This document shows positions 3,921 to 52,132 of a stretch of 64,000 nucleotides of DNA, in pieces. The stretch is from Amphiscolops sp. MND2022. Its lineage: Eukaryota. The position numbers and the translations under genes were made by a program. How positions within the stretch are numbered: the stretch's first letter is position 1; each line of letters opens with the position of its first letter. The notes under the pieces were generated by a model. The model ran no database searches, had not been told where the DNA came from, and saw only the letters and a list, made by a program, of their open reading frames with translations. Location of the stretch: assembly GCA_964187785.1 (NCBI GenBank), contig OZ076411.1:58218001-58282000 (forward strand). Direction: 5' to 3'.

Positions 3921-4017
3921 CTGAATTGAATCTCAACGAATCCAAACTTAGTACAAATAATGAATTGAATTGTTATTACTCGGAATAAGATTCAACCAAT
4001 CAAATTTGAATTACGTA

Positions 4018-6790: not shown

Positions 6791-7399
6791 GAAAATTCAC
6801 AAAGAAATACCACCACAGTTAAAGTCGCAACCAATTCTTTTTAATTTGATTTTAACTGCGTTTACGTAATTCAAAAAATTGAATTGAATCTCCAAGAATC
6901 CAAACTTACAAATAATAAATTGCGTTATCACTCGGAATAAGATTCTACCAATCAAAATTGAGTTACGTAATAAATGCTGAGATTACATGTAGAGAGCGGC
7001 GATTGACCGACCGCTCAACTGTCAGACTGTGCCTTTAGCCGATCCTATCATATATAATAGGATATCAGCGATGATGGTTGTATGGATTATAGCCGAACAG
7101 GATTAAAGTCGAATTTTTTTATAGCAGACTAGGATTGGATTCTTGATTGTAATTGGGCAAACCATTTTGGAAGCTTTAGCTTCCTAATTATTATGCAACA
7201 ATTAGATGCAGTCAGAAGAGATGGAAGTTAATGCATGTAGATTCGGTTATAATCCCAAGGGCTGTAATTCTGTTCGGGCTAAATCACGGCTAACCAGTGA
7301 TAATATTCTAGTTTTTGTTGTGAAACTATAATAGTAGTTGGTTATTATATACGCATTACAAACCGCAGGGGGGGGGGTTAGTTAGCAAAATAAAATTTC

Positions 7400-7490
7400 T
7401 ACCAAAGACTATGAGTCCCTCCCGGGACTCGAACCTCGCCGGTTGAAATAATGGGCCAGCGACCTAACCACTATGCCACGAAACCATCTC
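7400..7490 (-). ncRNA. tRNA-like Pol III cassette with terminal GNRA hairpin in the left terminus (mirror copy 32861-32960, +)
   Basis: Box A TGGCATAGTGG (7478-7468), box B GGTTCGAGTCC (7435-7425), hairpin GAGTCCC-GGGA-GGGACTC (7430-7413), then T4 runs. Does not fold into a clean cloverleaf. Confidence 0.5.
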
Positions 7491-7539
7491 AACCAGTATA
7501 TACAGGTTCTATATAAACCCAATAAATACCCAGTGAGCA

Positions 7540-7900
7540 CCCCCCGTCCACACTCTACATGCAAAAATTGAAAAATTTTGAAAATCTTACAAAAATTCGG
7601 GAAAGATATCTGAAACAATCAGAAATGAAAAAAACCACATCGTTGACATCAGAAAACAAAAAACGATAAAAAACTGTCAAAAATGTAACACCCCCCTTAC
7701 ACACTCTATATGCAAAAAATTGAAGTTTTTGAAAAACTCGGGAAAGGATCTGGAACAATCAAAATGAAAAAAAACGCATCGTTGACATCAGAAAACAAAA
7801 AAAACGATAACTGTCAAAAATGTGAACACAACCCCCCCCCCCCCTCCACAATCTACATGCAAAAAATCGAAAAATTTAAAATTTTTCAAATAACCCGAAA
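7540..7900 (+). repeat. Subterminal ~150-bp tandem repeats (~2.5 copies) with C-tracts
   Basis: CTACATGCAAAAAATTGAA...CATCGTTGACATCAGAAAACAAAAAACGATAA...CTGTCAAAAATGT-Cn recurs near 7550, 7700 and 7850, and is mirrored in each right-arm unit. Confidence 0.8.
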
Positions 7901-10068
7901 TGGTGTGAAACATTCGAAAATCTTGTTAAAAGCGTCGCAATCATCAATAATGAGGGCAAAAGGTCCCAGTAAATACTTCCTCAGGACATGTAAAATCCCA
8001 AAAACGAACAAAAACAGAAAACGGAACTTTCAACATGGAGTTTTGCAGCAAGATTTTGACCGTGGAACACAACTAAAACCAAACTATTAGAAATGTTCTT
8101 TCTGTAAACCTCATTCCAACGGCAGTCATTCATGGGAAATGAGAAACCCAAATTCAAGAGTGCCCATGACTGACTTGTAAAGTCTTTTAATTCCGCTGGT
8201 TGAACAGCTATTAATGGATTCTAGGTCGCATTATGCGGTTTGATACGAAGCAATTTATGCATTTTACAGAAATCCGTATAACTATAGTCATTGCTGCCAG
8301 TGTTTATGGTAACCGAGGATAAACAGGACTATATACCAGCAAAGCCGGAAAAAGCAAGGCTCATGCTTACCAAGTCCAATTGAGCATCATATCTGCTAAG
8401 TAATGACAAACATCGTACTTACACCTTCTGATCGTGATCATAAAGTCTTTAAAATGTAAGATACTACTACGAAGCTCCTTTCAGCGAAGGGGTATTGAAA
8501 TTTAGAAGCCAAGCATTTAACTTGTCTCGTTTTAGACTGTAAATGAGACATTATTGTGCCCATCAAGAGAAACTTTACCAGTCGGCTCTCTACCAGTAAT
8601 ATTCATCTCAATATCCAGGCGTTTAGTATTGCAGTTAATTAAAAATATATATCAAAGATATCCCTTGTGAAATCACCAATTTTTGGGTTTTGATGAGAAA
8701 CAATTTACGCTATCCAAACTTGTAAACCTTGTCTTTCTCATCTCAATTCGTGGGTATCTTTTGTCTCAAGTGTAACAGTCTGTAATCAATTGCAGGTGTA
8801 GTTTACATCCATTGCGCCAATTTTAGTACTGGATTTTCAAGCAAAAAGTAAAACAGATAGTTAATTGCACTCGATCAAATCACAACCTGGTCATCTCAGG
8901 TAAATCTAGCGAAGAGACTTCAAGTTACTTGTTTTCTGATCTTTGATACTTTCGATACTTTTCCAAAATTAAAACCTACATCTAGGGCTGTTCAGTCCCG
9001 CAATGTTTCCGCCTAACTGGAGAATAAATTCAATATACCAATAGATACTAGGTTTCATTGTGTTCAAGTATTTGTGATGGTCGAAAAAGATGATAACTCC
9101 ATCACTCCAATTATATGCTTACCGATTATTCAAGCTGCTTTCAGAGAATAGAATAAATTGACATTTCGGAAACTTTTACCACAAAATGTCATGCAAACCG
9201 GGGTTTCCTTTCGATTACCTGCAAATTAGAATAGGTACTGCTTGAAAGGTTGGCGAAAAGTCTACATATTGATAAAATTGCACGCCGGTGAGCTTTGTTT
9301 TTTGAAGGTTGCCTTGGATTGAACAGAAAGGAAACCTCACGCCCATCTTCGTTTTCAATGGTACTTCTGGAATACCTCCAACTGAGACACGGAGCTTTTA
9401 TAAAGACTCGGAGCTCTGACCAAGAATTGAATGTTTCAGATTGCATCTACCTACGAATGAGGATTCTAAATAGTGTAAAGTTGTGACCAATCAAGAGTAT
9501 GGTCTATATCGTCTCAAACATCATATCATAACCGCCCGAGCCTGACGGTAGATCAGCTGGATCTTTTCACTACTACATAGTCAAGTATCTCCCAATGTTT
9601 AGAGCTGTATATATTCGAAAAATTCACAATGCCTAGAGCTGCATATTCATGCACTTCCCATTTTCCAGAGTGAACGTTTTCTGCTAAAATTGTCTCTATT
9701 TCTTGATGCCGAGAATTACATAGAAGGTTTTGAATATTGTACTTTGCTGTTTTCATAATTCATGCAATCTCAGCAACATGAGACTGACAACATTTGTCAG
9801 TTATAAAAGCAACTTTAAAATGAGTCAGATTGAGTACGCAAAAGCTCCACTAAACAAGCTGACGCACGTTCAACAGCTGTAAAAAACATTTACACATACT
9901 GTGTCGGTACCGCTTTTGATCTTATCCAGCGTCGCACTCTGCAGAGTCTGTTTGCTTAATTATTTTCTAATTGTTTGACTGATGTTAAAAACAAATGCCA
10001 CCCGGGACACGCTATTGAAGCCACTGTCTAATGATTAATCACAAGTACAAAGTTCCGGTGTCGCTTTC

Positions 10069-10299
10069 ATGTTTACACAGCGTGTCGCTTTATTTAATCA
10101 ATATGGACTTGGCAACTACAGAGATCTATTGATCCAATATCAATCTTGCATCCGGTCTGCTCGGCCAAAACAAAAACAATCCATACTAAATTTTGTTTAC
10201 GATGAACTAGCGAATGGAAATGATTTGAATTTTGAGGTCTCGATTCTGTTTCAATCATTAGTATCTTGTTTCAAAACATTCATCAAATTTAGTGAATGA
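10069..10299 (+). CDS. Small orphan ORF (76 aa) present in all four copies
   Basis: Same length and almost the same translation at 21273-21503, 25596-25826 and 29912-30142. No recognisable motif. Confidence 0.3.
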   Translation: MFTQRVALFNQYGLGNYRDLLIQYQSCIRSARPKQKQSILNFVYDELANGNDLNFEVSILFQSLVSCFKTFIKFSE

Positions 10300-10487
10300 A
10301 AAAAGAATAGCAAGCCATTTCCGTGGTGTAAAAGTTTTGTGCCTGGTAAACATTGTTCTGTATGCAACAAGTTCTCTGTTGTGTTAAATGTCATTGAGCT
10401 TCAGTTTACTTCAAGTATTTTGTCAGTTAATTTTTTTCAGACGTTTGTCTTGAGATCACCGGTAGCACAGCATAATCACCAGTCAAA

Positions 10488-10871
10488 ATGTATCAGAAAT
10501 CAGCCATGACTTCCAGCTCTCCCACATCCTCAAAAGATCTCGAGTTCGGAGATGCCCATATTGACGTGGCATCATCTGATAAACGGCTTGTCCGCGTGAC
10601 CACAAACACATATAAAAACAGTGGTCTTACATTCATCAACATCAAGTTGTTCAAGAAAAATGAGGATCAAGAAGACTTTCGCATGCAACAGAGAGTGGGT
10701 CTCACTGTCAAGGAGTTTCAGGAAATTATAGCGAATGTAGAAAATATTAGCATGGGCCCTCCCAGTCCAGACGGCAGTACGGGGGAGAAGAAAATCAATA
10801 AGAGGATTGCTCAAAGCTATACGGGAACTGCTGTCGTCAAGAAGCCAAAAACTGCTGATAAGAAGGAATGA
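10488..10871 (+). CDS. PC4/Sub1-like ssDNA-binding protein (127 aa); right-arm copies frameshifted
   Basis: KRLVRVTTNTYKNSGLTFINIKLF...QRVGLTVKEFQEIIANVENI parallels the PC4 pattern RYVSVRDFKGKVLIDIREY...[20 protein letters not shown]. Basic C-terminal tail. By-eye match only. Confidence 0.6.
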   Translation: MYQKSAMTSSSPTSSKDLEFGDAHIDVASSDKRLVRVTTNTYKNSGLTFINIKLFKKNEDQEDFRMQQRVGLTVKEFQEIIANVENISMGPPSPDGSTGEKKINKRIAQSYTGTAVVKKPKTADKKE

Positions 10872-11815
10872 AAAGTTGTACAACTCATTTCAAAAGTAAT
10901 TACAGCATACAAGTTTCGTTAATGTTCCTAGTTTTAATCCGTTTTTATAACCATTAATTGTAGTAAAATAGGTTTTTCGAATGTTTTTGCTTCTATTTCA
11001 TTTTTCTTGCATCGGTACATCCCATGTTCTCAATCGTTTTTTTTTGTTGAACTGTGCTTTAATGCTTTCTTTTGTTTGTCCCTGATTTTGTCTTTTCTTC
11101 AATCTACCCTTTCTATCATTAGTTTTTTATCATTTATTTCGTTTTTGTTTCCATTGCATACGCTCCTCTCCTCATTTACGCTCTATCCCATCTTATACTG
11201 TAACGTATCGATTTGAGTTTACTTTCGATGAAGTGTTGTTGTTCCCTTCCTGTGGTATCCGCTCTTTTTTGCAATTTTCACCTCTTATACGTTTAAATTA
11301 ATTACTTGATTTACCTTTTTAATGTGCTTTGTTCTATTTTCTCCTGTCGTTGTTCCAAATCTGTACGTTAAGGGAGTATTCAATATTTAGCTAATCCCCA
11401 CTATTTCGTTTGTTGGTGTGATGCTTTTGTTTAATCTCAAAGTCCAGTGAAGTAATATATATTCGATATATACATTTTTTCAGCTCGTAGGTTTTTGAAT
11501 TAGTTTCATTCATCCCGAGTTTTTTTTCGTTGTTGAGGTAGTATTGGGTATTGAAAACACTTCGTGAAAAACTACTCAAAAATTTTTTCACTCCTTTATA
11601 TTTTATAGCAACATTGATGAAAAACATCCTTTTCCGAACGTTTTTGAGTAAGGGAATCTTTTCGGTGGCGGTTCTCCAGAATGTGCAAGCATCTTGAAAC
11701 TCGAATTGTCTCATGGAACTGTAAAACCCGTGATCCAAGCAACTTTTTGATTTTGTATAGTCAATGTGAAGTAATTGTATCAACTTTCATTTACAATTTT
11801 TTTTGTAGACGAAAC

Positions 11816-12262
11816 ATGGTGGAAGCAATGCATGAACAGCATCCGGACTTTTTCAAAAAACATCGGGAAAGGTTTCGGTACCTGGTGTTAGAAAAGGAAC
11901 CAAGGATTGGGCTTGACATTCCCTCAGGATCAAATTACGCATTTGGAGTTCATTCTTCAACCTCTGATTATCTTTGCGGCTTTGAGAAACAACCACACTA
12001 CCATGTTCTTTTTGAGTGGGATTCCAATATTAGAAAAGGTTACAATGTACCCTGCCTCTATTCAACTTTCTGTCTACTGTTGGCGGATTGTTCGAGTCTC
12101 GTTATGCAAGGTGAAATTATGAATCGTCTGCAGGTTGCAATGAAGTACAACGTAAAAGAAAACAAAACCTTGCTAGCGCAGGGTCGACGCAAAGTTCCTG
12201 TTGTTCAAATCAGACGAGACAAAAGTGTTCAAAACTGGTTTTTTACCGACTGCCACGTTTAG
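11816..12262 (+). CDS. Hypothetical protein with HUH-endonuclease-like motifs (ORF open from 11681)
   Basis: KQPHYHVLF (PHYHVLF at 11993-12013) followed ~50 aa later by YNVK (Tyr at 12146). The right-arm copy has a premature TAA at 19676-19678. Confidence 0.45.
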   Translation: MVEAMHEQHPDFFKKHRERFRYLVLEKEPRIGLDIPSGSNYAFGVHSSTSDYLCGFEKQPHYHVLFEWDSNIRKGYNVPCLYSTFCLLLADCSSLVMQGEIMNRLQVAMKYNVKENKTLLAQGRRKVPVVQIRRDKSVQNWFFTDCHV

Positions 12263-13276
12263 CCGATTTCAATAGTTGATTCAAGGCCCATCGGCTGCAA
12301 CTTTGTATAGAGTCTTGGACATTCTCAATGACGTATACGGAAGCATCGACACTACTAATTTGTATTTTTCGATTGACAATTCCAAAACTTTGTAAAGCTT
12401 GCATAGTTTATGAGGAATACATTGTGACATGAATATAATCTTCAAACCACTGTTTCCTTGTCAACGTCAGCCAGTGCTTGACAGCAAAAAATGGTTAGGG
12501 ATCAAAATTGATCAGTCAGGTATAAATAAATTGGATCATTGTGTACTGACATGTTTGCACTATCAAAAATTCATCTGAACGCTGGTAACGCTTAGTAGTA
12601 AATTTTGATTACATGAGGGAATTGCGCCGTTAGATTCAAACAAACTGAATCTTTGTGTAGTGGCATTTTAACGCTGTCATCGATTTATCTGAATACTGCG
12701 CATATAGTGACCGTGACAAAAACAATAAAACCTTGAAAAAGTAGGAGTATCAGTTTCACGATACTCGGAAACGAGAGCTGTAATTTGATGCATGTAATTT
12801 TAGTGTAGTAAAATACATGTAGTTCTATACATGTACTGTGTAGTCAATGAGTCAGGTCAGATATTGAGATGTAATACTCCAGGGTACAAGCATCGTTTAC
12901 TCAATGATTAATAAGACGATATACGCAACGAATAAACTGCAATACATGCTTTGTTTGCCGTTGCAAACCTAATTCTTCCTTTTCAACTCCGTCAAGCAAC
13001 TCGTTCCAACCAGTTCTTTCGAAACTCAAAACGTCACTGTAGAGCAAAAACTTTGATAGAATGTGCCCACTCATACACATTGTATTTTGGTTGTTCCTAA
13101 ATCCAATGGCGTTTAGTGTTGAGCAGAATCATTAACTCTCAAGCTCAGATAACAATCTAGAGTAGAAATAGAAATCGGCCAAATTGTACATTCGTCTTTT
13201 TTTCAAATTTGATCTTTTGTGAATAATTGGGCGCACTCTTCAACTTGTCAGCAGCTGAGCTACTATTAAACTATCA

Positions 13277-13858
13277 ATGCAGACTTTCACTGCTGTGTGT
13301 GGTAACTCGCCGTTCACATTTTATGAAACTTGGTTCAATAAAACAATAGCCATAATTGAAGAAACACGGTGGGAGGACATCTGGTCGATAAAAAGGTCAG
13401 TTTCGATCCCAAAAGATTTGTTTATTCTGCTGCGAGCTGAATGTGTATCGGGTACTAATCCAAATAGCTTCAACCTAACGGACATTCTAGAAACGCCATT
13501 CACTACAACAATAGTTTTTGATCGTTTCGAGTTGCCGTATGGTGTACGACAGCTTCTGTTTGACATTGATTGTCGAAATATACCCGTTTCAGAAAATCAG
13601 TTGGGTTGCATGACAGACTTGGAAAATTTAGAAAGTTACTGGGATATTAGAAGTCCCCCTGAATCACCACAAGAAGCTTCATGTTCTCTGTTGCCAAAGA
13701 TTGTCGACACAAATCAAGAGCAAATTGCTTGTGACAGTCCAATCAAATCAGAAACTAGCCCAATAAAGGAATCCCCGCCAGCACCAAAGAAGTATAGAGT
13801 CGAAAAATTCAAAAGGGAGGCATTGCAAATAGCTAAACTTGATCTCGCAGACGTTTGA
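13277..13858 (+). CDS. Orphan 193-aa protein, intact in both arms (partner 17679-18272, -)
   Basis: Longest ATG-initiated ORF in the arms and open in both copies. S/P-rich region and basic PPAPKKYRVEK (possible NLS) near the C-terminus. Confidence 0.55.
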   Translation: MQTFTAVCGNSPFTFYETWFNKTIAIIEETRWEDIWSIKRSVSIPKDLFILLRAECVSGTNPNSFNLTDILETPFTTTIVFDRFELPYGVRQLLFDIDCRNIPVSENQLGCMTDLENLESYWDIRSPPESPQEASCSLLPKIVDTNQEQIACDSPIKSETSPIKESPPAPKKYRVEKFKREALQIAKLDLADV

Positions 13859-14238
13859 CAAACATTCATGATGTGATGTTTTATAACTTGTTTGTTTGTA
13901 TCATCGTTCAAATCATTGCTTCAGTTTTGTCTATCAAGTCATTCTGTAATAAACTTTTCAGCTATTCTTTTCCCTGATGCCTAGCTTGATCACCTCACAA
14001 GAGTAAATTCGTGCTACTTTGAGTACTTGAATCCATAACGATTGATTAGAGAAAATTGATATTGCAGCTTGTCTCAACAATCAGAGTGGGCGAGGAAAAA
14101 AAAACAAAATAACCACGCCTTGATTCTGAATAACCCTTTACTTATAATCACTCTTCTATGTAAAGCCAATTCTTTTCAGAAAACGAAAAATGGTCAAGAA
14201 ATATTTTGGAAAATTAACTTTACACTGTTAGTTTGAAG

Positions 14239-14810
14239 TCATCTCTTCTCAGATTTTTGCCGTTGAATACAAACTCCAATACGTAGCATTGATTGTTTTT
14301 CGAAGAATTGATCGATGGTCTCAGTAAAAATTAAATGTTTCATGGCTCGTTCGACGCGGTAGCCAGCCGGAGTGATTTTCATCTGTCTCCTAGAAGTTTT
14401 TTCATCTCTGCTCTTGACGTCTTTCAAGAACACTGACAAGATGAAAGGACCTTTCAACTCCTTTTCGTTTGGATCCACCAATTCTACAGAGACCGATAAA
14501 ATTTCGCCGAATGTTGTCTCCAGCATTGGCTCCAGAATAAATTTGACCGTTACCTCAATTTTTCTCCAACGCGTTCAGACTGTAGGTTGAAGCAAGACTT
14601 TGCGAGAGTTTTACTAAAGACACACAATACAGGTTCTTGCTCACTGACGATAGTAGCTGCAAAGGCCTTGAGGTGCTCGAACGCTTCCTTGTCAGTTTTT
14701 ATTATTGCCATGCATTCTCTAATACAAGTATTCGTCAATATGGGTGTGCAAAAACCCACAGTCGAGTCCGAAAGAATATCACATAAATTTGTGTGAACAC
14801 CATCTGACAT
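14239..14810 (-). CDS. Split ORF pair (86 aa + 95 aa), probably one gene; mirrored at 16729-17297 (+)
   Basis: Adding one A in GAGAAAAATTGAG would fuse ...GEK IEVTVKFILEPMLET... The break is the same in both arms. Confidence 0.4.
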
Positions 14811-15137
14811 TGTCTGAAGTAGAGCAGAATTTTTTTAAAACTAATTTTTAAGGTTCATGTTCAATCTAGTTCTTTCAAACATTTGGGGACGACAATCTAT
14901 TTTCGTACTTTCGATATGAACCTGAACTAATTTTGATACCCATTTTCCAGCTTCACTGGTAATCGAGGTGATATCCGTTTTGTTTGAAAAGACGTCTCTT
15001 CGAAGTTATTATAGTAACGTACCGCTAACGACTGATATTGTTAATTATAGCTCTCAGGTTACCGATTGAGGTTAAAGAAGTCTGAATCAGGGAAAAATTT
15101 AAGATATACACTGATGAAACTTTTCTGATCATTGAGT

Positions 15138-22900: not shown

Positions 22901-25900
22901 AACTACACCTGCAATTGATTACAGACTGTTACACTTGAGACAAAAGATACCCACGAATTGAGATGAGAAAGACAAGGTTTACAAGTTTGGATAGCGTAAA
23001 TTGTTTCTCATCAAAACCCAAAAATTGGTGATTTCACAAGGGATATCTTTGATATATATTTTTAATTAACTGCAATACTAAACGCCTGGTTATTGAGATG
23101 AATATTACTGGTAGAGAGCCGACTGGTAAAGTTTCTCTTGATGGGCACAATAATGTCTCATTTACAGTCTAAAACGAGACAAGTTAAATGCTTGGCTTCT
23201 AAATTTCAATAACCCTTCGCTGAAAGGAGCTTCGTAGTAATATCTTACATTTTAAAGACTTTTATGATCACGATCAGAAGGTGTAAGTACGATGTTTGTC
23301 ATTACTTAGCAGATATGATGCTCAATTGGACTTGGTAAGCATGAGCCTTGCTTTTACCGGCTTTGCTGGTATATAGTCCTGTTTATCCTCGGTTACCATA
23401 AACACTGGCAGCAATGACTATAGTTATACGGATTTCTGTAAAATGAATAATTTGCTTCGTATCAAACCGCATAATGCGACCTAGAATCCATTCATAGCTG
23501 TTCAACCAGCGGAATTAAATGACTTTACAAGTCAGTCATGGGCACTCTTGAATTTGGGTTTCTCATTTCCCATGAATGACTGCCGTTGGAATGAGGTTTA
23601 CAGAAAGAACATTTCTAATAGTTTGGTTTTAGCTGTGTTCCACGGTCAAAATCTTGCTGCAAAACTCCATGTTGAAAGTTCCGTTTTCTGTTTTTGTTCG
23701 TTTTTGGGATTTTACATGTCCTGAGGAAGTATTTACTGGGACCTTTTGCCCTCATTATTGTAATTGCGACGCTTTTAACAAGATTTTTGAATGTTTCACA
23801 CCATTTCGGGTTATTTGAAAAATTTTAAATTTTTCGATTTTTTGCATGTAGATTGTGGAGCGGGGGTGGTGTTCACATTTTTGACAGTTATCGTTTTTTT
23901 TTGTTTTCTGATGTCAACGATGCGTTTTTTTTCATTTTGATTGTTCCAGATCCTTTCCCGAGTTTTTCAAAAATTTTAATTTTTTGCATGTAGAGTGTGT
24001 AAGGGAGGGGGGGGCGGTGTTACATTTTGACAGTTTTTTATCGTTTTTTGTTTTCTGATGTCAACGATGTGGTTTTTTTTATTTCTGATTCTTCCAGATA
24101 CTTTCCCGAATTTTTGTAATATTTTCAAAATTTTTCAATTTTTGCATGTAGAGTGTGGGCGGGGGGGGGGGGGTGCTCACTGGGTATTTATTGGGTTTAT
24201 ATAGAACCTGTATATACTGGTTGAGATGGTTTCGTGGCATAGTGGTTAGGTCGCTGGCCCATCATTTCAACCGGCGAAGTTCGAGTTTTCACGAACTGTT
24301 TTCAATACCCAATACTATCTCAACAACGAAAAAAAACTCGGGATGAATGAAACTAATTCGAAAACCTACGAGCTGAAAAAATGTATATATCGAATATATA
24401 TTACTTCACTGGACTTTGAGATTAAACAAAAGCATCACACCAACAAACGAAATAGTGGGGATTAGCTAAATATTGAATACTCCCTTAACGTACAGATTTG
24501 GAACAACGACAGGAGAAAATAGAACAAAGCACATTAAAAAGGTAAATCAAGTAATTAATTTAAACGTATAAGAGGTGAAAATTGCAAAAGAGCGGATACC
24601 ACAGGAAGGGAACAACAACACTTCATCGAAAGTAAACTCAAATCGATACGTTACAGTATAAGATGGGATAGAGCGTAAATGAGGAGAGGAGCGTATGCAA
24701 TGGAAACAAAAACGAAATAAATGATAAAAAACTAATGATAGAAAGGGTAGATTGAAGAAAAGACAAAATCAGGGACAAACAAAAGACAGCATTATAGCAC
24801 AGTTCAACAAAAAAACGATTGAGAACATGGGATGTACCGATGCAAGAAAAATGAAATAGATGCAAAAACATTCGAAAAACCTATTTTACTACAGTTAATC
24901 GTTATGAAAACGGATTAAAACTAGGAACATTAACAAAACTTGTATGCTGTAATTACTTTTGAAATGAGTTGTACAACTTTTCATTCCTTCTTATCAGCAG
25001 TTTTTGGCTTCTTGACGACAGCAGCCCCCGTATAGCTTTGAGCAATCCTCTTATTGATTTTCTTCTCCACTGTACTGCCGTCTGGACTGGGAGGGCCCAT
25101 GCTAATATTTTCTACATTCGCTATAATTTCCTGAAACTCCTTGACAGTGAGACCCACTCTCTGTTGCATGCGAAAGTCTTCTTGATCCTCATTTTTCTTG
25201 AACAACTTGATGTTGATGAATGTAAGACCACTGTTTTTATATGTGTTTGTGGTCACGCGGAAAAGCCATCAGATGATGCCACGTCAATATGGGCATCTCC
25301 AAACTCGAGATCTTCTGAGGATGTGTGAGAGCTGGAAGTCATGGCTGATTTTTGATACATTTTGACTGGTGATTATGCTGTGCTACCGGTGATCTCAAGA
25401 CAAACGTCTGAAAATTATTCGTCTCAAAAATTAACTGACAAAATACTGACAAACGTCTCAAAAATTAACTGACAAAATACTTGAAGTAAACTGAAGCTCA
25501 ATGACATTTGACACAACAGAGAACTTGTTGCATACAGAACAATGTTTACCAGGCACAAAACTTTAACACCACGGAAATGGCTTGCTATTCTTTTTTCATT
25601 CACTAAATTTGATGAATGTTTTGAAACAAGATACTAATGATTGAAACAGAATCGAGACCTCAAAATTCAAATCATTTCCATTCGCTAGTTCATCGTAAAC
25701 AAAATTTAGTATGGATTGTTTTTGTTTTGGCCGAGCAGACCGGATGCAAGATTGATATTGGATCAATAGATCTCTGTAGTTGCCAATTCCATATTGATTA
25801 AATAAAGCGACACGCTGTGTAAACATGAAAGCGACACCGGAACTTTGTATTTATTGATTGTTTATTACACAGTAGCTTCAATAGGCGTGTCGCGAGTGGC

Positions 25901-28900
25901 ATATAGATCTCCGTAGTTACAAATTCCAGATTGATCAAACAGAGCGACACGCTGTGTAAACATGAAAGCGACGTCGGCCCTTTGTACTTGTGATTAATCA
26001 TTAGACAGTGGCTTCAATAGCGTGTCCCGGGTGGCATTTGTTTTTAACATCAGTCAAACAATTAGAAAATAATTAAGCAAACAGACTCTGCAGAGTGCGA
26101 CGCTGGATAAGATCAAAAGCGGTACCGACACAGTATGTGTAAATGTTTTCTACAGCTGTTGAACGTGCGTCAGCTTGTTTAGTGGAGCTTTTGCGTACTC
26201 AATCTGACTCATTTTAAAGTTGCTTTTATAACTGACAAATGTTGTCAGTCTCATGTTGCTGAGATTGCATGAATTATGAAAATAGCAAAGTACAATATTC
26301 AAAACCTTCTATGTAATTCTCGGCATCAAGAAAGAGACAATTTTAGCAGAAAACGTTCACTCTGGAAAATGGGAAGTGCATGAATATGCAGCTCTAGGCA
26401 TTGTGAATTTTTCGAATATATACAGCTCTAAACATTGGGAGATACTTGACTATGTAGTAGTGAAAAGATCCAGTTGATCTACCGTCAGGCTCGGGCGGTT
26501 ATGATATGTTTGAGACGATATAGACCATACTCTTGATTGGTCACAACTTTACACTATTTAGAATCCTCATTCGTAGGTAGATGCAACCTGAAACCTTCAA
26601 TTCTTGGTCAGAGCTCCGAGTCTTTATAAAAGCTCCGTGTCTCAGTTGGAGGTATTCCAGAAGTACCATTGAAAACGAAGATGGGCGTGAGGTTTCCTTT
26701 CTGTTCAATCCAAGGCAACCTTCAAAAAACAAAGCTCACCGGCGTGCAATTCTATCAATATGTAGACTTTTCGCCAACCTTTCAAGCAGTACCTATTCTA
26801 ATTTGCAGGTAATCGAAAGGAAACCCCGGTTTGCATGACATTTTGTGGTAAAAGTTTCCGAAATGTCAATTTATTCTATTCTCTGAAAGCAGCTTGAATT
26901 ATCGGTAAGCATATAATTGGAGTGATGGAGTTATCATCTTTTTCGACCATCACAAATACTTGAACACAATGAAACCTAGTATCTATTGGTATATTGAATT
27001 TATTCTCCAGTTAGGCGGAAACATTGCGGGACTGAACAGCCCTAGATGTAGGTTTTAATTTTGGAAAAGTATCGAAAGTATCAAAGATCAGAAAACAAGT
27101 AACTTGAAGTGTCTTCGCTAGATTTACCTGAGATGACCAGGTTGTGATTTGATCGAGTGCAATTAACTATCTGTTTTACTTTTTGCTTGAAAATCCAGTA
27201 CTAAAATTGGCGCAATGGATGTAAACTACACCTGCAATTGATTACAGACTGTTACACTTGAGACAAAAGATACCCACGAATTGAGATGAGAAAGACAAGG
27301 TTTACAAGTTTGGATAGCGTAAATTGTTTCTCATCAAAACCCAAAAATTGGTGATTTCACAAGGGATATCTTTGATATATATTTTTAATTAACTGCAATA
27401 CTAAACGCCTGGTTATTGAGATGAATATTACTGGTAGAGAGCCGACTGGTAAAGTTTCTCTTGATGGGCACAATAATGTCTCATTTACAGTCTAAAACGA
27501 GACAAGTTAAATGCTTGGCTTCTAAATTTCAATAACCCTTCGCTGAAAGGAGCTTCGTAGTAATATCTTACATTTTAAAGACTTTTATGATCACGATCAG
27601 AAGGTGTAAGTACGATGTTTGTCATTACTTAGCAGATATGATGCTCAATTGGACTTGGTAAGCATGAGCCTTGCTTTTACCGGCTTTGCTGGTATATAGT
27701 CCTGTTTATCCTCGGTTACCATAAACACTGGCAGCAATGACTATAGTTATACGGATTTCTGTAAAATGAATAATTTGCTTCGTATCAAACCGCATAATGC
27801 GACCTAGAATCCATTCATAGCTGTTCAACCAGCGGAATTAAATGACTTTACAAGTCAGTCATGGGCACTCTTGAATTTGGGTTTCTCATTTCCCATGAAT
27901 GACTGCCGTTGGAATGAGGTTTACAGAAAGAACATTTCTAATAGTTTGGTTTTAGTTGTGTTCCACGGTCAAAATCTTGCTGCAAAACTCCATGTTGAAA
28001 GTTCCGTTTTCTGTTTTTGTTCGTTTTTGGGATTTTACATGTCCTGAGGAAGTATTTACTGGGACCTTTTGCCCTCATTATTGTAATTGCGACGCTTTTA
28101 ACAAGATTTTTGAATGTTTCACACCATTTCGGGTTATTTGAAAAATTTTAAATTTTTCGATTTTTTGCATGTAGATTGTGGAGCGGGGGTGGTGTTCACA
28201 TTTTTGACAGTTATCGTTTTTTTTTGTTTTCTGATGTCAACGATGCGTTTTTTTTTCATTTTGATTGTTCCAGATCCTTTCCCGAGTTTTTCAAAAATTT
28301 TAATTTTTTGCGAGTGTGTAAGGGAGGGGGGGGGCGGTGTTACATTTTGACAGTTTTTTATCGTTTTTTGTTTTCTGATGTCAACGATGTGGTTTTTTTT
28401 ATTTCTGATTCTTCCAGATACTTTCCCGAATTTTTGTAATATTTTCAAAATTTTTCAATTTTTGCATGTAGAGTGTGGACGGGGGGGGGTGCTCACTGGG
28501 TATTTATTGGGTTTATATAGAACCTGTATATACTGGTTGAGATGGTTTCGTGGCATAGTGGTTAGGTCGCTGGCCCATCATTTCAACCGGCGAAGTTCGA
28601 GTTTTCACGAACTGTTTTCAATACCCAATACTATCTCAACAACGAAAAAAAACTCGGGATGAATGAAACTAATTCGAAAACCTACGAGCTGAAAAAATGT
28701 ATATATCGAATATATATTACTTCACTGGACTTTGAGATTAAACAAAAGCATCACACCAACAAACGAAATAGTGGGGATTAGCTAAATATTGAATACTCCC
28801 TTAACGTACAGATTTGGAACAACGACAGGAGAAAATAGAACAAAGCACATTAAAAAGGTAAATCAAGTAATTAATTTAAACGTATAAGAGGTGAAAATTG

Positions 28901-31900
28901 CAAAAGAGCGGATACCACAGGAAGGGAACAACAACACTTCATCGAAAGTAAACTCAAATCGATACGTTACAGTATAAGATGGGATAGAGCGTAAATGAGG
29001 AGAGGAGCGTATGCAATGGAAACAAAAACGAAATAAATGATAAAAAACTAATGATAGAAAGGGTAGATTGAAGAAAAGACAAAATCAGGGACAAACAAAA
29101 GACAGCATTATAGCACAGTTCAACAAAAAAACGATTGAGAACATGGGATGTACCGATGCAAGAAAAATGAAATAGATGCAAAAACATTCGAAAAACCTAT
29201 TTTACTACAGTTAATCGTTATGAAAACGGATTAAAACTAGGAACATTAACAAAACTTGTATGCTGTAATTACTTTTGAAATGAGTTGTACAACTTTTCAT
29301 TCCTTCTTATCAGCAGTTTTTGGCTTCTTGACGACAGCAGCCCCCGTATAGCTTTGAGCAATCCTCTTATTGATTTTCTTCTCCACTGTACTGCCGTCTG
29401 GACTGGGAGGGCCCATGCTAATATTTTCTACATTCGCTATAATTTCCTGAAACTCCTTGACAGTGAGACCCACTCTCTGTTGCATGCGAAAGTCTTCTTG
29501 ATCCTCATTTTTCTTGAACAACTTGATGTTGATGAATGTAAGACCACTGTTTTTATATGTGTTTGTGGTCACGCGGAAAAGCCATCAGATGATGCCACGT
29601 CAATATGGGCATCTCCAAACTCGAGATCTTCTGAGGATGTGTGAGAGCTGGAAGTCATGGCTGATTTCTGATACATTTTGACTGGTGATTATGCTGTGCT
29701 ACCGGTGATCTCAAGACAAACGTCTGAAAATTATTCGTCTCAAAAATTAACTGACAAAATACTGACAAACGTCTCAAAAATTAACTGACAAAATACTTGA
29801 AGTAAACTGAAGCTCAATGACATTTGACACAACAGAGAACTTGTTGCATACAGAACAATGTTTACCAGGCACAAAACTTTAACACCACGGAAATGGCTTG
29901 CTATTCTTTTTTCATTCACTAAATTTGATGAATGTTTTGAAACAAGATACTAATGATTGAAACAGAATCGAGACCTCAAAATTCAAATCATTTCCATTCG
30001 CTAGTTCATCGTAAACAAAATTTAGTATGGATTGTTTTTGTTTTGGCCGAGCAGACCGGATGCAAGATTGATATTGGATCAATAGATCTCTGTAGTTGCC
30101 AATTCCATATTGATTAAATAAAGCGACACGCTGTGTAAACATGAAAGCGACACCGGAACTTTGTATTTATTGATTGTTTATTACACAGTAGCTTCAATAG
30201 GCGTGTCGCGAGTGGCATATAGATCTCCGTAGTTACAATTTCCAGATTGATCAAACAGAGCGACACGCTGTGTAAACATGAAAGCGACGTCGGCCCTTTG
30301 TACTTGTGATTAATCATTAGACAGTGGCTTCAATAGCGTGTCCCGGGTGGCATTTGTTTTTAACATCAGTCAAACAATTAGAAAATAATTAAGCAAACAG
30401 ACTCTGCAGAGTGCGACGCTGGATAAGATCAAAAGCGGTACCGACACAGTAGGTGTAAATGTTTTCTACAGCTGTTGAACGTGCGTCAGCTTGTTTAGTG
30501 GAGCTTTTGCGTACTCAATCTGACTCATTTTAAAGTTGCTTTTATAACTGACAAATGTTGTCAGTCTCATGTTGCTGAGATTGCATGAATTATGAAAATA
30601 GCAAAGTACAATATTCAAAACCTTCTATGTAATTCTCGGCATCAAGAAAGAGACAATTTTAGCAGAAAACGTTCACTCTGGAAAATGGGAAGTGCATGAA
30701 TATGCAGCTCTAGGCATTGTGAATTTTTCGAATATATACAGCTCTAAACATTGGGAGATACTTGACTATGTAGTAGTGAAAAGATCCAGCTGATCTACCG
30801 TCAGGCTCGGGCGGTTATGATATGTTTGAGACGATATAGACCATACTCTTGATTGGTCACAACTTTACACTATTTAGAATCCTCATTCGTAGGTAGATGC
30901 AACCTGAAACCTTCAATTCTTGGTCAGAGCTCCGAGTCTTTTTAAAAGCTCCGTGTCTCAGTTGGAGGTATTCCAGAAGTACCATTGAAAACGAAGATGG
31001 GCGTGAGGTTTCCTTTCTGTTCAATCCAAGGCAACCTTCAAAAAACAAAGCTCACCGGCGTGCAATTCTATCAATATGTAGACTTTTCGCCAACCTTTCA
31101 AGCAGTACCTATTCTAATTTGCAGGTAATCGAAAGGAAACCCCGGTTTGCATGACATTTTGTGGTAAAAGTTTCCGAAATGTCAATTTATTCTATTCTCT
31201 GAAAGCAGCTTGAATTATCGGTAAGCATATAATTGGAGTGATGGAGTTATCATCTTTTTCGACCATCACAAATACTTGAACACAATGAAACCTAGTATCT
31301 ATTGGTATATTGAATTTATTCTCCAGTTAGGCGGAAACATTGCGGGACTGAACAGCCCTAGATGTAGGTTTTAATTTTGGAAAAGTATCGAAAGTATCAA
31401 AGATCAGAAAACAAGTAACTTGAAGTGTCTTCGCTAGATTTACCTGAGATGACCAGGTTGTGATTTGATCGAGTGCAATTAACTATCTGTTTTACTTTTT
31501 GCTTGAAAATCCAGTACTAAAATTGGCGCAATGGATGTAAACTACACCTGCAATTGATTACAGACTGTTACACTTGAGACAAAAGATACCCACGAATTGA
31601 GATGAGAAAGACAAGGTTTACAAGTTTGGATAGCGTAAATTGTTTCTCATCAAAACCCAAAAATTGGTGATTTCACAAGGGATATCTTTGATATATATTT
31701 TTAATTAACTGCAATACTAAACGCCTGGTTATTGAGATGAATATTACTGGTAGAGAGCCGACTGGTAAAGTTTCTCTTGATGGGCACAATAATGTCTCAT
31801 TTACAGTCTAAAACGAGACAAGTTAAATGCTTGGCTTCTAAATTTCAATAACCCTTCGCTGAAAGGAGCTTCGTAGTAATATCTTACATTTTAAAGACTT

Positions 31901-32921
31901 TTATGATCACGATCAGAAGGTGTAAGTACGATGTTTGTCATTACTTAGCAGATATGATGCTCAATTGGACTTGGTAAGCATGAGCCTTGCTTTTACCGGC
32001 TTTGCTGGTATATAGTCCTGTTTATCCTCGGTTACCATAAACACTGGCAGCAATGACTATAGTTATACGGATTTCTGTAAAATGAATAATTTGCTTCGTA
32101 TCAAACCGCATAATGCGACCTAGAATCCATTCATAGCTGTTCAACCAGCGGAATTAAATGACTTTACAAGTCAGTCATGGGCACTCTTGAATTTGGGTTT
32201 CTCATTTCCCATGAATGACTGCCGTTGGAATGAGGTTTACAGAAAGAACATTTCTAATAGTTTGGTTTTAGTTGTGTTCCACGGTCAAAATCTTGCTGCA
32301 AAACTCCATGTTGAAAGTTCCGTTTTCTGTTTTTGTTCGTTTTTGGGATTTTACATGTCCTGAGGAAGTATTTACTGGGACCTTTTGCCCTCATTATTGT
32401 AATTGCGACGCTTTTAACAAGATTTTTGAATGTTTCACACCATTTCGGGTTATTTGAAAAATTTTAAATTTTTCGATTTTTTGCATGTAGATTGTGGAGC
32501 GGGGGTGGTGTTCACATTTTTGACAGTTATCGTTTTTTTTTGTTTTCTGATGTCAACGATGCGTTTTTTTTTCATTTTGATTGTTCCAGATCCTTTCCCG
32601 AGTTTTTCAAAAATTTTAATTTTTTTGCATGTAGAGTGTGTAAGGGAGGGGGGGGGCGGTGTTACATTTTGACAGTTTTTTATCGTTTTTTGTTTTCTGA
32701 TGTCAACGATGTGGTTTTTTTTATTTCTGATTCTTCCAGATACTTTCCCGAATTTTTGTAATATTTTCAAAATTTTTCAATTTTTGCATGTAGAGTGTGG
32801 ACGGGGGGGTGCTCACTGGGTATTTATTAGGTTTATATAGAACCTGTATATACTGGTTGAGATGGTTTCGTGGCATAGTGGTTAGGTCGCTGGCCCATCA
32901 TTTCAACCGGCGAAGTTCGAG
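19965..32921 (+). repeat. Tandem triplication of a ~4.32-kb unit (19965-24285, 24286-28601, 28602-32921)
   Basis: The same ORFs recur at offsets 4323 and 4316. Both junctions read GTTCGAG|TTTTCACGAAC. Confidence 0.95.
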
Positions 32922-33934
32922 TCCCGAGAGGGACTCATAGTCTTTGGTAGAAATTTTATTTTGCTAACTAACCCCCCCCCCCTGCGGTTTGTAATGCGTA
33001 TATAATAACCAACTACTTATAATTCACATCGAATCAAAAGTCAGATCTGTATTGAAAATTTGTTTGCAACACGTTTACATTTTTTCATTTAAAAGGATCC
33101 TATAAAGTATTTGCTATAAATTTATATCAATTATAGGAATTTATATTTCTAGTAACTTCATTACGATACATATGCCGCAACGAACTAGCAAGATCTTTCT
33201 AGTTCGATTAACAGCCAATAGAAACGCGTTCTTATTTCTGATACGCGTTACGAGTTTTGCTCGTTACACTGTGTGATTTGGCGTTACGCGTTGTGATCAA
33301 ACTACAGTAAATGACCACTTTACACTCTCTTCAATTACGTACTTTGACTGGTTTCCACTTCACACACGAAGACGGAAGTTGATTATTTTACACATATAGG
33401 CTATATAGTATTTCACATAGGATCCTATTTACTGGTCATCACTGGATAGAGGCTTGGCGTTAACATTGGCTTCTCATTTTACAGAAGCAGGTTTCGGAAA
33501 AAAACAAAACTTTGAAAAAATCTTGTTTAAAACATGTTCAATTCGTTGGCTTTCTCAATTTAGAGTCGATTTCGTGTTTGGTTGTGGACGAAGCCCAAGG
33601 TGCTATAAATTCGTTCCAAGTCTACCGAACTTGGAATAAGAACTAGAAGAGCATCGAAAATTTTTACTTGCGATTTTAGGAACTTCAAAATTTCTATAAC
33701 TGAAATTGAAACAATTGAACAAAATGCAGGTTTTTATCACGTTTGAAACTCTGCCTAGAACATGTTAAAACGCGTTTAAAACACGGCATGTTTTAAACAT
33801 GCGAACCGTCAGAAGTGTCAGAACTTTTCTTTTTCAATGGAGTAGACGTAAACATCCGGAAGTGCAATAACTGAAGTATACGGAGCAATCATTCGAGTGG
33901 AAATGTTGAATGTATGAGTGGATGTTTGTTTCAG

Positions 33935-51984: not shown

Positions 51985-52132
51985 CTTACAAACAAGTTTT
52001 TTCCGTTGGGGCCTTTCTCGAAACCTTCAGGCTGTTTCATGAAAATGTCGGCATCGACATTAGCGTTCAAATAGGCTGTCTTGATGTCGAGCTGCTTTAT
52101 TTGCCAACTATTTTGTGCAGCAATGTTCATGA

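What the first reader, a model, noticed from the sequence alone, without database searches (positions are those of the whole stretch)
7333..33017. 25.7-kb Polinton-ended element that is essentially one giant palindrome and lacks all Polinton core genes
Seen: AGTAGT...ACTACT ends, a perfect 6-bp TSD (TATAAT), a 7,639-bp left arm inverted against the right arm, and only a 1,595-bp unique spacer. Established: these ends and 6-bp TSDs are the signature of Polinton/Maverick retroviral-like integrase insertion, whose TIRs are normally a few hundred bp to about 1 kb and whose 15-25-kb bodies encode pPolB, integrase, ATPase, protease and capsids. None of those is recognisable here. Inference: this is a fold-back (copy-back/snap-back) or satellite genome that duplicated one end of a parental polintovirus by template switching, kept both integration-competent termini and was integrated in trans by a helper. 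That would make it a defective-interfering or satellite class of Polinton carrying its own cargo (PC4-like, HUH-like, TRAF).
Basis: partly seen in the sequence, partly recalled or inferred. Interest (0 to 1): 0.92.

Follow-up and report, generated by a model that had tools for sequence, protein, structure and literature searches.

The report
Palindromic gene-poor Polinton-derived satellite element
This is a real inserted mobile element from a family that descends from Polinton virus-like transposons, has lost their polymerase, integrase and capsid genes, and exists as a giant inverted duplication that probably depends on complete Polintons to move.

Summary
The element spans 7333-33017, ends in AGTAGT...ACTACT and is flanked by a perfect TATAAT duplication. 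It has a 7,639-bp left arm, a 1,595-bp spacer and an inverted right side. Without the two extra units the element is about 17 kb.

It is not an assembly artefact. Five further copies in an independent long-contig assembly are also palindromic. The two whose ends are both on hand each have their own 6-bp duplication. Arms are 98-100% identical within a copy but only 82-92% identical between copies.

No pPolB, integrase, ATPase or capsid gene is present. Each arm carries three small genes under purifying selection. All three have homologues, as a neighbouring trio, in complete Polinton genomes. One integrated relative with an integrase also has AGTAGT ends and a 6-bp duplication.

The spacer holds a truncated TRAF (MATH-domain) gene as subfamily cargo.

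Best reading: a heritable, non-autonomous Polinton derivative integrated in trans. It is not a one-off copy-back genome. "PC4-like" is not supported and "HUH-like" only weakly. No helper from the same genome was found, and the host is unidentified.

The parts
7327..7332 (.). Left target-site duplication, TATAAT
   Evidence: Read directly; identical to 33018-33023.
7333..33017 (.). Whole element, 25,685 bp, ends AGTAGT...ACTACT
7333..14971 (+). Left arm, 7,639 bp. The outer ~3.1 kb has no conserved gene; the inner part carries the gene trio.
   Evidence: Self-BLAST, 97-98% identity to the inverted right arm.
7405..7500 (-). Subterminal tRNA-like stretch, preceded by a run of about 10 G. It is mirrored at about 32850-32945 and sits at the two internal tandem junctions.
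   Evidence: Folds with z = -3.7. Not called a tRNA by ARAGORN or Rfam. Conserved in copy L002.
10488..10871 (+). Left-arm copy of the 127-aa 'PC4-like' gene, intact
   Evidence: 46-52% identical to a gene of Polinton genome L006. dN/dS 0.22-0.34 between subfamilies. No PC4 match.
11816..12392 (+). Left-arm copy of the ~190-aa 'HUH-like' gene, broken: 1 frameshift, shared with the right-arm copy
   Evidence: The family has 152 representatives. dN/dS 0.10.
13277..13858 (+). Left-arm copy of orf197, intact
   Evidence: 34-36% identical to the gene next to pPolB in L006 and L007. dN/dS 0.21-0.26 between subfamilies.
14550..14810 (-). Left-arm copy of a small ORF (orf76) at the inner end of the arm, intact; conserved only within the TRAF-bearing subfamily
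14972..16566 (.). Unique spacer, 1,595 bp
15424..16434 (-). TRAF-like gene (TRAF-C/MATH domain, no RING or zinc fingers), broken by 3 frameshifts. An intact 344-aa version is in copy L002.
   Evidence: Pfam PF21355: 51.1 bits here and 70.6 bits in L002.. MATH-domain dN/dS 0.25.
16567..24286 (-). Right arm, first full inverted copy of left-arm positions 14971 down to 7427
16729..16989 (+). Right-arm copy of orf76, intact
17679..18272 (-). Right-arm copy of orf197, intact
19144..19720 (-). Right-arm copy of the HUH-like gene, broken: 1 frameshift, the same as in the left arm
   Evidence: There is no indel between the two arm copies.
19965..32922 (-). Three tandem copies (about 4,320 bp each, 99.6% identical) of the outer-arm block. 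Each carries a PC4-like copy with 1 frameshift (20661-21037, 24984-25360, 29300-29676).
32923..33017 (-). Right terminal 95 bp, present once, mirror of 7333-7427
33018..33023 (.). Right target-site duplication, TATAAT

Best explanation
The element is a decayed copy of a heritable family of non-autonomous, Polinton/Maverick-derived elements. Members are about 14-17 kb long and consist of two inverted arms of about 7-10 kb around a short unique centre. Shown: they have lost the protein-primed polymerase, the integrase, the packaging ATPase and the capsid genes. Each arm keeps a trio of small genes inherited from Polintons. One subfamily carries a RING-less TRAF (MATH) gene in the centre. Inferred: a retroviral-type integrase supplied by a complete Polinton inserts them, recognising the AGTAGT ends and making 6-bp duplications. 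Inferred, less certain: the helper's protein-primed polymerase copies them. The very long inverted ends could then pair during copying and be made alike at each round. That would explain why arms are nearly identical within a copy yet far apart between copies. Their near-Polinton length hints at packaging in helper capsids. In the window copy, the tandem triplication of 4.3 kb of the right arm arose after insertion, by slippage at a few bases of microhomology.
For: Real insertion: exact ends and TATAAT duplication.

The family is palindromic. Six copies show it: the window, ctg180116 (L001/L002), ctg183430 (L005), ctg185915 (L003), ctg184939 (L004, partial) and ctg185139 (L010). They come from a separate assembly at 84-113x coverage. 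Own 6-bp duplications are TGAATG and GACGTA.

Arm identity is 98.2, 100.0 and 99.6% within copies, against 82-92% between copies.

Polinton descent: all three arm genes match a neighbouring trio in L006, L007 and L008 (E 1e-11 to 1e-40 for the PC4-like and HUH-like genes; orf197 1e-29 to 1e-31 in L006 and L007 but only 4e-4 in L008). L006 and L007 carry rve, a Pox_A32-type ATPase and an adenovirus-type protease; pPolB reaches Pfam significance in L007 only (PF03175), and the 1,423-aa L006 protein is taken as pPolB from its position and its shared N-terminal zinc fingers. Of L008's core genes only a weak precomputed rve match is on record. L008 is integrated, 17,718 bp long, with 214-bp inverted ends starting AGTAGT and a TCCGTT duplication. 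The spacer of L003 keeps a piece of the Polinton protease.

The genes are real: dN/dS is 0.10 (HUH-like), 0.21-0.26 (orf197) and 0.22-0.34 (PC4-like) between subfamilies.

Non-autonomy: no core gene is found by tblastn or Pfam. The HUH-like gene carries the same frameshift in both arms, so this copy was probably already defective when its arms were last identical.

Lengths: 16,727 and 14,335 bp, and about 17,048 bp for the window copy without the extra units. Relatives measure 17,718 bp and at least 16.3-16.6 kb.

Order of events in the window: tandem units are 99.6% alike while the arms are 97-98% alike. The PC4-like frameshift is shared by all three right-hand copies and absent on the left.
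Against: No complete Polinton was found in the same genome, and none that shares more than the terminal AGTAGT hexamer. The relatives with core genes come from other samples and are only 35-50% identical in the shared proteins.

The trio's order differs: orf197(-) PC4-like(+) HUH-like(+) in complete genomes, all three (+) in the palindromic elements. The route from parent to palindrome is therefore unknown.

Gene conversion between arms in the chromosome would also keep them alike, so copying by a helper polymerase is not required by the data.

Packaging is inferred from length alone (three full-length palindromic copies).

The functions of the three proteins are unknown.

No empty-site allele or read-level evidence was available. 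The host organism was not identified.
Confidence: 0.72

Rival explanations
1. Same element and same trans-integration, but it is an ordinary chromosomal transposon with giant inverted ends. It is never copied or packaged like a virus. Its arms stay alike because long inverted repeats in a chromosome undergo gene conversion.
For: Within-copy arm identity far above between-copy identity fits conversion as well as it fits resetting at each copying round. No capsid or polymerase gene is present. No free linear form was seen. IMG/VR holds no relative.
Against: Arm identity differs between copies (98.2, 99.6, 100.0%). It is lowest in the copy with broken HUH-like and TRAF genes and highest in the one where those genes are intact. 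That looks like decay after a reset rather than steady conversion, but it rests on only three copies. Full lengths stay close to those of complete Polintons.
Confidence: 0.25
2. The element is autonomous. One of the three conserved small proteins, for example the HUH-like one, is a new kind of transposase or replication initiator that moves the element without any Polinton helper.
For: The trio is the only gene set kept in all subfamilies and is under purifying selection. The HUH-like protein has a near-invariant His-x-His on a strand. Its weak fold matches are almost all Rep or NS1 nuclease domains.
Against: The same trio sits in genomes that have their own integrase and polymerase, so it is not a substitute for them. 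By general knowledge, HUH enzymes do not make fixed 6-bp duplications, whereas retroviral-type integrases of Polintons do. The candidate catalytic Tyr is Phe in 8 of 44 family members. The window copy seems to have been inserted with the HUH-like gene already frameshifted in both arms.
Confidence: 0.07
3. A one-off copy-back (defective-interfering) genome made by a template switch during replication of a parental Polinton and then integrated.
For: Palindromic layout with two integration-competent ends. By general knowledge, adenovirus incomplete particles and deletion derivatives of linear plasmids with protein-primed replication form such molecules.
Against: The layout is shared by at least six copies in two subfamilies that differ by 8-18% or more in DNA. 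They share the same spacer or the same arm boundaries, and their genes evolved under selection. The palindrome is therefore inherited, not remade each time. The gene order does not match one end of any complete relative seen.
Confidence: 0.04
4. Assembly artefact: a fold-back chimeric read or a mis-join produced the inversion.
For: Long palindromes and tandem repeats are classic failure points of assemblers. The 3x tandem array in particular could be mis-counted.
Against: The arms differ by about 2% and carry different breaks: the PC4-like gene is intact on the left and frameshifted on the right. The outer ends have a perfect duplication. The same architecture recurs in five places of an independent assembly.
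Confidence: 0.02

Closest known systems
Polintons / Mavericks (polintoviruses), including integrated copies such as locus L008
   Same: 5'-AG...CT-3' ends (here AGTAGT), 6-bp target duplications, a total length of about 14-18 kb, and three homologous genes.
   Different: By definition Polintons encode a protein-primed polymerase and a retrovirus-like integrase (PMC5499653). Neither is present here, nor are the ATPase, protease or capsid genes. Inverted ends here are 7.6 kb or more. L008 has 214 bp, and a recent coral survey searched only the 100-2,500 bp range (PMC11131425).
Transpovirons
   Same: Capsid-less, plasmid-like linear elements with inverted ends. They are thought to have arisen from Polinton-like viruses by losing the morphogenetic module, and they depend on another virus's particles (PMC5499653).
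   Different: Transpovirons are about 7 kb, carry a helicase fused to an inactivated polymerase, and ride in mimivirus particles. The present family has none of these genes, is twice as long, is almost wholly palindromic, and is found integrated with 6-bp duplications.
Incomplete adenovirus genomes and hairpin or palindromic deletion derivatives of protein-primed linear plasmids (my own knowledge, not checked in a paper here)
   Same: Replicons with protein-primed polymerases can yield sub-genomic molecules that duplicate one end in inverted orientation. Pairing of long inverted ends keeps them identical.
   Different: Those arise sporadically and are not inherited lineages with their own selected genes and cargo. 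The arms here are not collinear with one end of any complete relative seen.
Foldback (FB) transposons
   Same: Very long inverted ends that contain internal tandem repeats, with a short or absent centre.
   Different: By my own knowledge FB elements make 9-bp duplications and have no Polinton genes. Here the duplications are 6 bp and three genes are shared with Polintons.
HUH (Rep) endonucleases of small DNA viruses and plasmids; HUH genes reported in Mriyaviruses and some integrase-bearing Polinton-like virus clusters (bioRxiv 10.64898/2026.06.19.733378)
   Same: The ~190-aa protein has a near-invariant His-hydrophobic-His on a beta strand. In the PDB search 17 of the top 40 hits are Rep-type nuclease or origin-binding chains, and in the viral search 10 of the 11 named hits are Rep/NS1 proteins.
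   Different: No match reaches significance (best E 0.017). No Pfam or PDB sequence match was found. The would-be catalytic Tyr is not invariant. There is no helicase domain.

Membership tests
Polinton/Maverick (autonomous) | [quoted passage not shown] | tested here: not met
   No DNA_pol_B_2 match in any ORF. tblastn with the L007 pPolB and the presumed L006 pPolB finds nothing in the window element or in the palindromic loci it covered, L001-L005.
Polinton/Maverick (autonomous) | Encodes a retrovirus-like (rve) integrase | tested here: not met
   No rve match inside the element. tblastn with three integrases is negative. The only rve hit in the window belongs to a Copia element at 52-54 kb.
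Polinton/Maverick (autonomous) | 6-bp target-site duplication and 5'-AG...CT-3' inverted ends | tested here: met
   TATAAT (window), TGAATG (ctg180116) and GACGTA (L003). All ends start AGTAGT.
Polinton/Maverick (autonomous) | Morphogenetic module: capsid proteins, A32-type ATPase, adenovirus-type protease | tested here: not met
   Absent from the window element. Only the spacer of L003 keeps a truncated protease piece.
Non-autonomous derivative of Polintons | Internal sequence homologous to part of complete Polintons | tested here: met
   The PC4-like, HUH-like and orf197 genes match neighbouring genes of L006, L007 and L008.
Non-autonomous derivative of Polintons | Shares its terminal sequence with a complete element in the same genome | tested here: inconclusive
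   Only the AGTAGT hexamer is shared with L008, which comes from another sample. No complete element from sample ERZ25074608 was recovered with the look-ups available.
Copy-back / defective-interfering genome | Arises sporadically; arms collinear with one end of the parent | tested here: not met
   The palindrome is inherited across six copies and two subfamilies. The gene order differs from every complete relative seen.
HUH endonuclease superfamily (the ~190-aa protein) | His-hydrophobic-His metal-binding motif on a beta strand | tested here: met
   H61 and H63 are each present in 42 of 44 members. They lie on strand 62-67 of a model with pLDDT 90.
HUH endonuclease superfamily (the ~190-aa protein) | Invariant catalytic tyrosine on the following helix | tested here: inconclusive
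   Y111 lies on helix 100-115 but is Tyr in 33 of 44 members and Phe in 8 of 44.
HUH endonuclease superfamily (the ~190-aa protein) | Significant sequence or fold match to known Rep nuclease domains | tested here: inconclusive
   Pfam and PDB profile searches are empty. The best Foldseek E-value is 0.017 and TM-scores are below 0.3. RepB, M-Rep, circovirus Rep, AAV Rep and parvovirus NS1 are strongly over-represented among the weak hits.
PC4 / Sub1 single-strand DNA-binding fold (the 127-aa protein) | Match to the PC4 family by sequence profile | tested here: not met
   No PC4 family hit at E up to 1 for the window, L002 or L006 versions. A PDB profile search returned no PC4 chain.
TRAF proteins (spacer gene) | C-terminal TRAF-C/MATH domain | tested here: met
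   PF21355 scores 70.6 bits in the intact 344-aa L002 copy and 51.1 bits in the window fragment.
TRAF proteins (spacer gene) | N-terminal RING and TRAF-type zinc fingers | tested here: not met
   No RING or zinc-finger family matches the 344-aa protein at E up to 1.
Foldback transposons | 9-bp target duplication (my own knowledge) | tested here: not met
   All three palindromic copies whose ends are both on hand have 6-bp duplications.

The most novel reading that the evidence does not exclude
These elements are a true satellite lineage of polintoviruses. They would be capsid-less and polymerase-less genomes that keep a helper-sized length by doubling themselves into a palindrome, are copied and packaged by a helper Polinton, have their arms reset to identity at each round, and carry a RING-less TRAF decoy that interferes with host signalling. 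That would be the first satellite class described for Polintons, and a natural example of genome-length maintenance by palindromisation.
Probability: 0.3. Interest if true: 0.85.

Novelty: new variant of a known kind. Interest (0 to 1): 0.72.

Why it matters
Surveys find Polintons by their hallmark genes and by inverted ends of up to about 2.5 kb (PMC11131425). A family with no hallmark gene and 7-10 kb inverted ends escapes such screens. Yet it is abundant in at least one genome: the 90%-identity cluster of one HUH-like protein holds 93 member sequences.

If these elements depend on complete Polintons, they add a parasite-of-a-parasite layer comparable to transpovirons.

Arms that are identical at insertion would date each insertion, much as LTRs do for retrotransposons. 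That gives a descriptive handle on how Polinton-type genomes are copied.

The work also defines a conserved three-gene module of unknown function, with 152 representatives in public data for one of its genes. The module is shared by complete Polintons and their reduced derivatives. It also shows capture of a truncated TRAF gene whose MATH domain stayed under constraint.

Tried and rejected
- tRNA: the subterminal tRNA-like stretch is not called by ARAGORN or by Rfam, even at E 10. I treat it as tRNA-derived at most.
- A first AlphaFold model of the HUH-like protein, from 20 close sequences, was unusable (pLDDT 48). A 44-sequence alignment gave pLDDT 90.
- Pfam and PDB sequence searches with single proteins and with profiles gave nothing for the HUH-like, PC4-like and orf197 proteins.
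- IMG/VR held no relative of the HUH-like family. The broad alignment was too diverse for that tool.
- Host identification failed. TRAF and Copia protein searches returned only unnamed ENA or JGI proteins as close hits, and cluster look-ups gave no names. The one exception was a distant diatom protein (Epithemia clementina KAL7570788.1).
- Looking for a complete Polinton in sample ERZ25074608 through divergent HUH-like hits found only more palindromic copies.
- A 206-aa ORF in the outer arm of L002 is a translated minisatellite, not a gene.
- Two head-to-head insertions were rejected: the inner arm boundaries carry no AGTAGT end, and different copies share the same spacer.
- A possible second, decayed trio at about 38.7-40.3 kb of the window rests on three weak tblastn hits. 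Profile searches did not confirm it, apart from one weak PC4-like hit. ORFs at 34-48 kb show no Polinton domain.

Full report
**1. Observation**

The element runs from 7333 to 33017 (25,685 bp). It starts AGTAGTTGGTTATTATATACGC and ends with the exact reverse complement. A 32-nt terminal probe matches only these two places in 64 kb, against none expected by chance. TATAAT lies immediately outside both ends.

Self-BLAST pairs 7333-14971 (7,639 bp) in inverted orientation with sequence beginning at 16567, at 97-98% identity. That leaves a unique 1,595-bp spacer.

The right side is 16,451 bp long because the block corresponding to left-arm positions 7427-11570 is present three times in tandem (19965-24286, 24286-28602, 28602-32922; 99.6% identical). 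The terminal 95 bp is present once. The junctions show only 3-4 bases of microhomology and fall inside a tRNA-like stretch. Without the two extra units the element would be about 17,048 bp.

**2. Not an artefact: a family**

The ~190-aa ORF in the arm has 50 close homologues, all from ENA assemblies. Fetching their contigs gave five more elements from sample ERZ25074608. Its contig names indicate 84-113x coverage, and contigs reach about 1 Mb. The loci are:
- ctg180116 (L001/L002)
- ctg183430 (L005)
- ctg185915 (L003)
- ctg184939 (L004, cut by the contig end)
- ctg185139 (L010)

All are palindromic.
- ctg180116 is 16,727 bp, has the same 13-base ends as the window copy, and is flanked by TGAATG.
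- L003 and L010 form a divergent subfamily that DNA BLAST aligns with the window copy only in short gene-internal stretches (about 78% identity). L003 ends AGTAGTGGTGG, is flanked by GACGTA and is 14,335 bp long.

Over the 3.4-kb gene block, arms are 98.2% (window), 100.0% (ctg180116) and 99.6% (ctg183430) identical within a copy. Between copies they are only 82-92% identical. Arms therefore cluster by copy. They are made alike either at each round of propagation or by conversion afterwards. A chimeric read cannot explain arms that differ by 2%, carry different gene breaks, and recur with different flanks.

**3. Gene content**

No ORF in the element exceeds 197 aa. Pfam recognises only a TRAF/MATH domain in the spacer.

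Comparison of copies defines three conserved arm genes, all reading inward:
- a ~190-aa protein ("HUH-like")
- orf197

A small orf76 is confined to one subfamily. Between subfamilies, dN/dS is 0.10 for the HUH-like gene, 0.21-0.26 for orf197 and 0.22-0.34 for the PC4-like gene. These are real genes that mattered to the lineage.

The spacer gene is intact in ctg180116 (344 aa). It has an N-terminal region with no Pfam match followed by a MATH domain, with no RING or zinc fingers. Its MATH part has dN/dS 0.25. It is absent from the L003 subfamily, so it is cargo.

Break counts in the window copy:

| Gene | Left arm | Right arm |
|---|---|---|
| HUH-like | 1 frameshift | 1 frameshift, the same one (no indel between the arms) |
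| PC4-like | intact | 1 frameshift in each of the three copies |
| orf197 | intact | intact |
| orf76 | intact | intact |
| TRAF (spacer, single copy) | 3 frameshifts | |

The pattern implies this order of events:
1. Insertion with the HUH-like gene already broken.
2. Divergence of the arms.
3. The frameshift in the right-arm PC4-like copy.
4. The tandem triplication.

**4. Link to Polintons**

A profile of the HUH-like family found 152 representatives among 1.84 billion proteins. Most are 170-220 aa and unnamed. One is a diatom gene model.

Two of them lie on 16.6-kb and 16.3-kb metagenome contigs, L006 and L007 from ERZ1742291. L007 encodes:
- a 1,149-aa protein with the DNA_pol_B_2 domain (44.5 bits, cut-off 25.8)
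- an rve integrase (42.3 bits, cut-off 32.6)
- a Pox_A32-type ATPase (25.7 bits, cut-off 22.8)
- an adenovirus-type protease (19.7 bits, just under its cut-off)
- a ~438-aa protein in the capsid position

L006 has the same layout: rve integrase (39.4 bits), ATPase (22.3 bits, just under its cut-off), protease (19.1 bits) and a 437-aa protein. Its 1,423-aa protein did not reach a DNA_pol_B_2 match and is taken as the polymerase from its position and its shared N-terminal zinc fingers.

A third relative, L008 (ERZ25071366), is integrated in a 274-kb contig. It is 17,718 bp long with 214-bp inverted ends that begin AGTAGTATAG. It is flanked by TCCGTT and carries a gene with a weak rve match.

In all three, homologues of orf197, the PC4-like gene and the HUH-like gene sit side by side, between the polymerase and the protease. 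The arm genes are therefore Polinton genes, not private cargo. The spacer of L003 also retains the N-terminal part of the protease.

tblastn with all called proteins of L006-L008 finds no other Polinton gene in the window element.

**5. Mechanism**

Shown: a mobile family with AGTAGT ends, 6-bp duplications, no integrase or polymerase of its own, genes inherited from Polintons, and arms that are alike within copies.

Inferred from what is established for Polintons (6-bp duplications made by the rve integrase; PMC5499653, PMC6431247): integration is carried out in trans by a Polinton integrase.

Inferred with less certainty: the element is copied by the helper's protein-primed polymerase. In such systems long inverted ends can pair on the displaced strand, which would homogenise the arms. 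This draws on my own knowledge of adenovirus and linear plasmids.

The similar total lengths (14.3-17.0 kb against 16.3-17.7 kb) hint at a packaging constraint. That rests on three full-length palindromic copies.

The main rival for this part is plain gene conversion between chromosomal inverted repeats.

A RING-less TRAF would be expected to act as a decoy in TRAF signalling. This is general knowledge and was not tested here.

**6. The protein labels**

*PC4-like.* No tool returned PC4. The label is unsupported, and the fold was not tested.

*HUH-like.* With a 44-sequence alignment, AlphaFold gave a confident two-domain model (pLDDT 90). Foldseek found nothing at E below 0.001. Even so, Rep-type proteins are strongly over-represented among the weak hits:
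- PDB: 17 of the top 40 hits are Rep-type nuclease or origin-binding chains (pMV158 RepB in 11 of the top 13, nanovirus M-Rep, a vientovirus Rep, circovirus Rep', AAV2 Rep origin-binding domain) or an IS200-type transposase. Unrelated proteins such as VSG13, at ranks 1-2, are interspersed.
- Viral library: 10 of the 11 named hits are Rep, NS1 or replication-initiator proteins. The exception is an uncharacterised Klosneuvirus protein.

H46, C54, H61, H63 and C80 are near-invariant. The tyrosine that would be catalytic is Phe in 8 of 44 members. I read this as a Rep-like nuclease or origin-binding fold with a metal site. Whether it is catalytically active is open.

*orf197.* It has a conserved ~125-aa N-terminal domain, a variable middle, and a conserved basic proline-rich C-terminal patch. 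It has no database match.

**7. Comparison and novelty**

The element fails the definition of a Polinton, because it has no polymerase and no integrase. It meets the cis features: the ends and the duplication.

The nearest concept is the transpoviron, a capsid-less dependent derived from Polinton-like viruses (PMC5499653). Gene content, size and architecture all differ.

A phrase search for non-autonomous or derived Polintons and Mavericks in 8.4 million papers returned four papers, none describing anything like this. A coral survey limited its search for inverted ends to 100-2,500 bp and required hallmark genes.

I rate it a new variant of a known kind.

**8. Limits**

- The host is unidentified.
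- No helper from the same genome was found.
- There is no read-level or empty-site evidence.
- Protein functions are unknown.
- The evolutionary route to the palindrome is unknown, because the trio's order differs from that in complete relatives.

- I stopped once I noticed.
- The tblastn tables printed list alignment bounds for broken genes, from which approximate positions of frame changes could be read. I did not extract, list or use them. This report gives counts only.

Noticed in passing
L009 (ENA ERZ25074608 ctg170536_2x_c, 15,650 bp): A 2x-coverage contig flagged circular by its name. It consists of four head-to-tail copies (3.5-4.0 kb period, 99% identical) of just the PC4-like / HUH-like / orf197 block of the L003 subfamily. 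It could be a tandem array, an extrachromosomal circle or an assembler effect. Together with the window's triplication, it shows that arm segments of this family amplify in tandem repeatedly.
   Followed up: partly
L003:12407-12672 (minus strand), at the edge of the 657-bp spacer: A truncated N-terminal piece of the adenovirus-type protease of Polintons (43-53% identical to those of L006 and L007). It is a vestige of the complete ancestor at the centre of the palindrome.
   Followed up: partly
window 38688-40265: Three weak tblastn hits (E 0.008, 4e-4, 0.002) to orf197 (minus), PC4-like (plus) and HUH-like (plus). Their order and orientation match those in complete Polintons. This may be a very decayed second trio. 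Profile searches confirmed only a weak PC4-like hit (E 0.0012), and neighbouring ORFs show no Polinton domain.
   Followed up: partly
window 7405-7500 and mirror copies; L004:5700-5760: A tRNA-like sequence with box-A/box-B-like segments, preceded by a run of 10-12 G. It lies 40-170 bp inside both ends in the TRAF-bearing subfamily. It is not recognised as a tRNA by ARAGORN or Rfam and is absent from the L003 subfamily. The tandem-duplication junctions of the window copy fall inside it.
   Followed up: partly
window 50583-55843: A Copia-type LTR retrotransposon on the minus strand. Its direct repeats at 50583-50825 and 55600-55843 are 97% identical. It has gag (54367-55005) and a 736-aa pol piece with zinc knuckle, integrase and the start of RT. 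The closest protein hit (92%) is an unnamed ENA protein. Named relatives are only about 30% identical.
   Followed up: partly
window 3389-3921 and 6250-6793; 4220-4810: A 540-bp inverted repeat pair (95% identical) brackets a fragment of a Copia-type reverse transcriptase, just left of the element.
   Followed up: no
window 57299-59060, 34056-34241 and 1385-1547; also 44138-45181: A roughly 172-bp satellite array at 58.2-59.1 kb, with dispersed copies elsewhere in the window, and a 2 x 522-bp tandem duplication at 44.1-45.2 kb in a stretch with higher G+C.
   Followed up: no
window 55852-57490 (+): ORF pieces with an SHPRH helical domain and a RING finger, probably exons of a host SHPRH-like gene next to the Copia element.
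   Followed up: no
L010:1-1045 (ENA ERZ25074608 ctg185139): A host gene product of 910 residues with HARP and SNF2 helicase domains (SMARCAL1-like), called as one uninterrupted ORF. It could help identify the host and suggests few introns in that gene.
   Followed up: no
Protein P0084 (NCBI KAL7570788.1, Epithemia clementina): A 2,643-aa diatom gene model contains ten stretches matching the HUH-like profile. It probably merges a tandem array of such genes. It shows that the family reaches diatoms.
   Followed up: no
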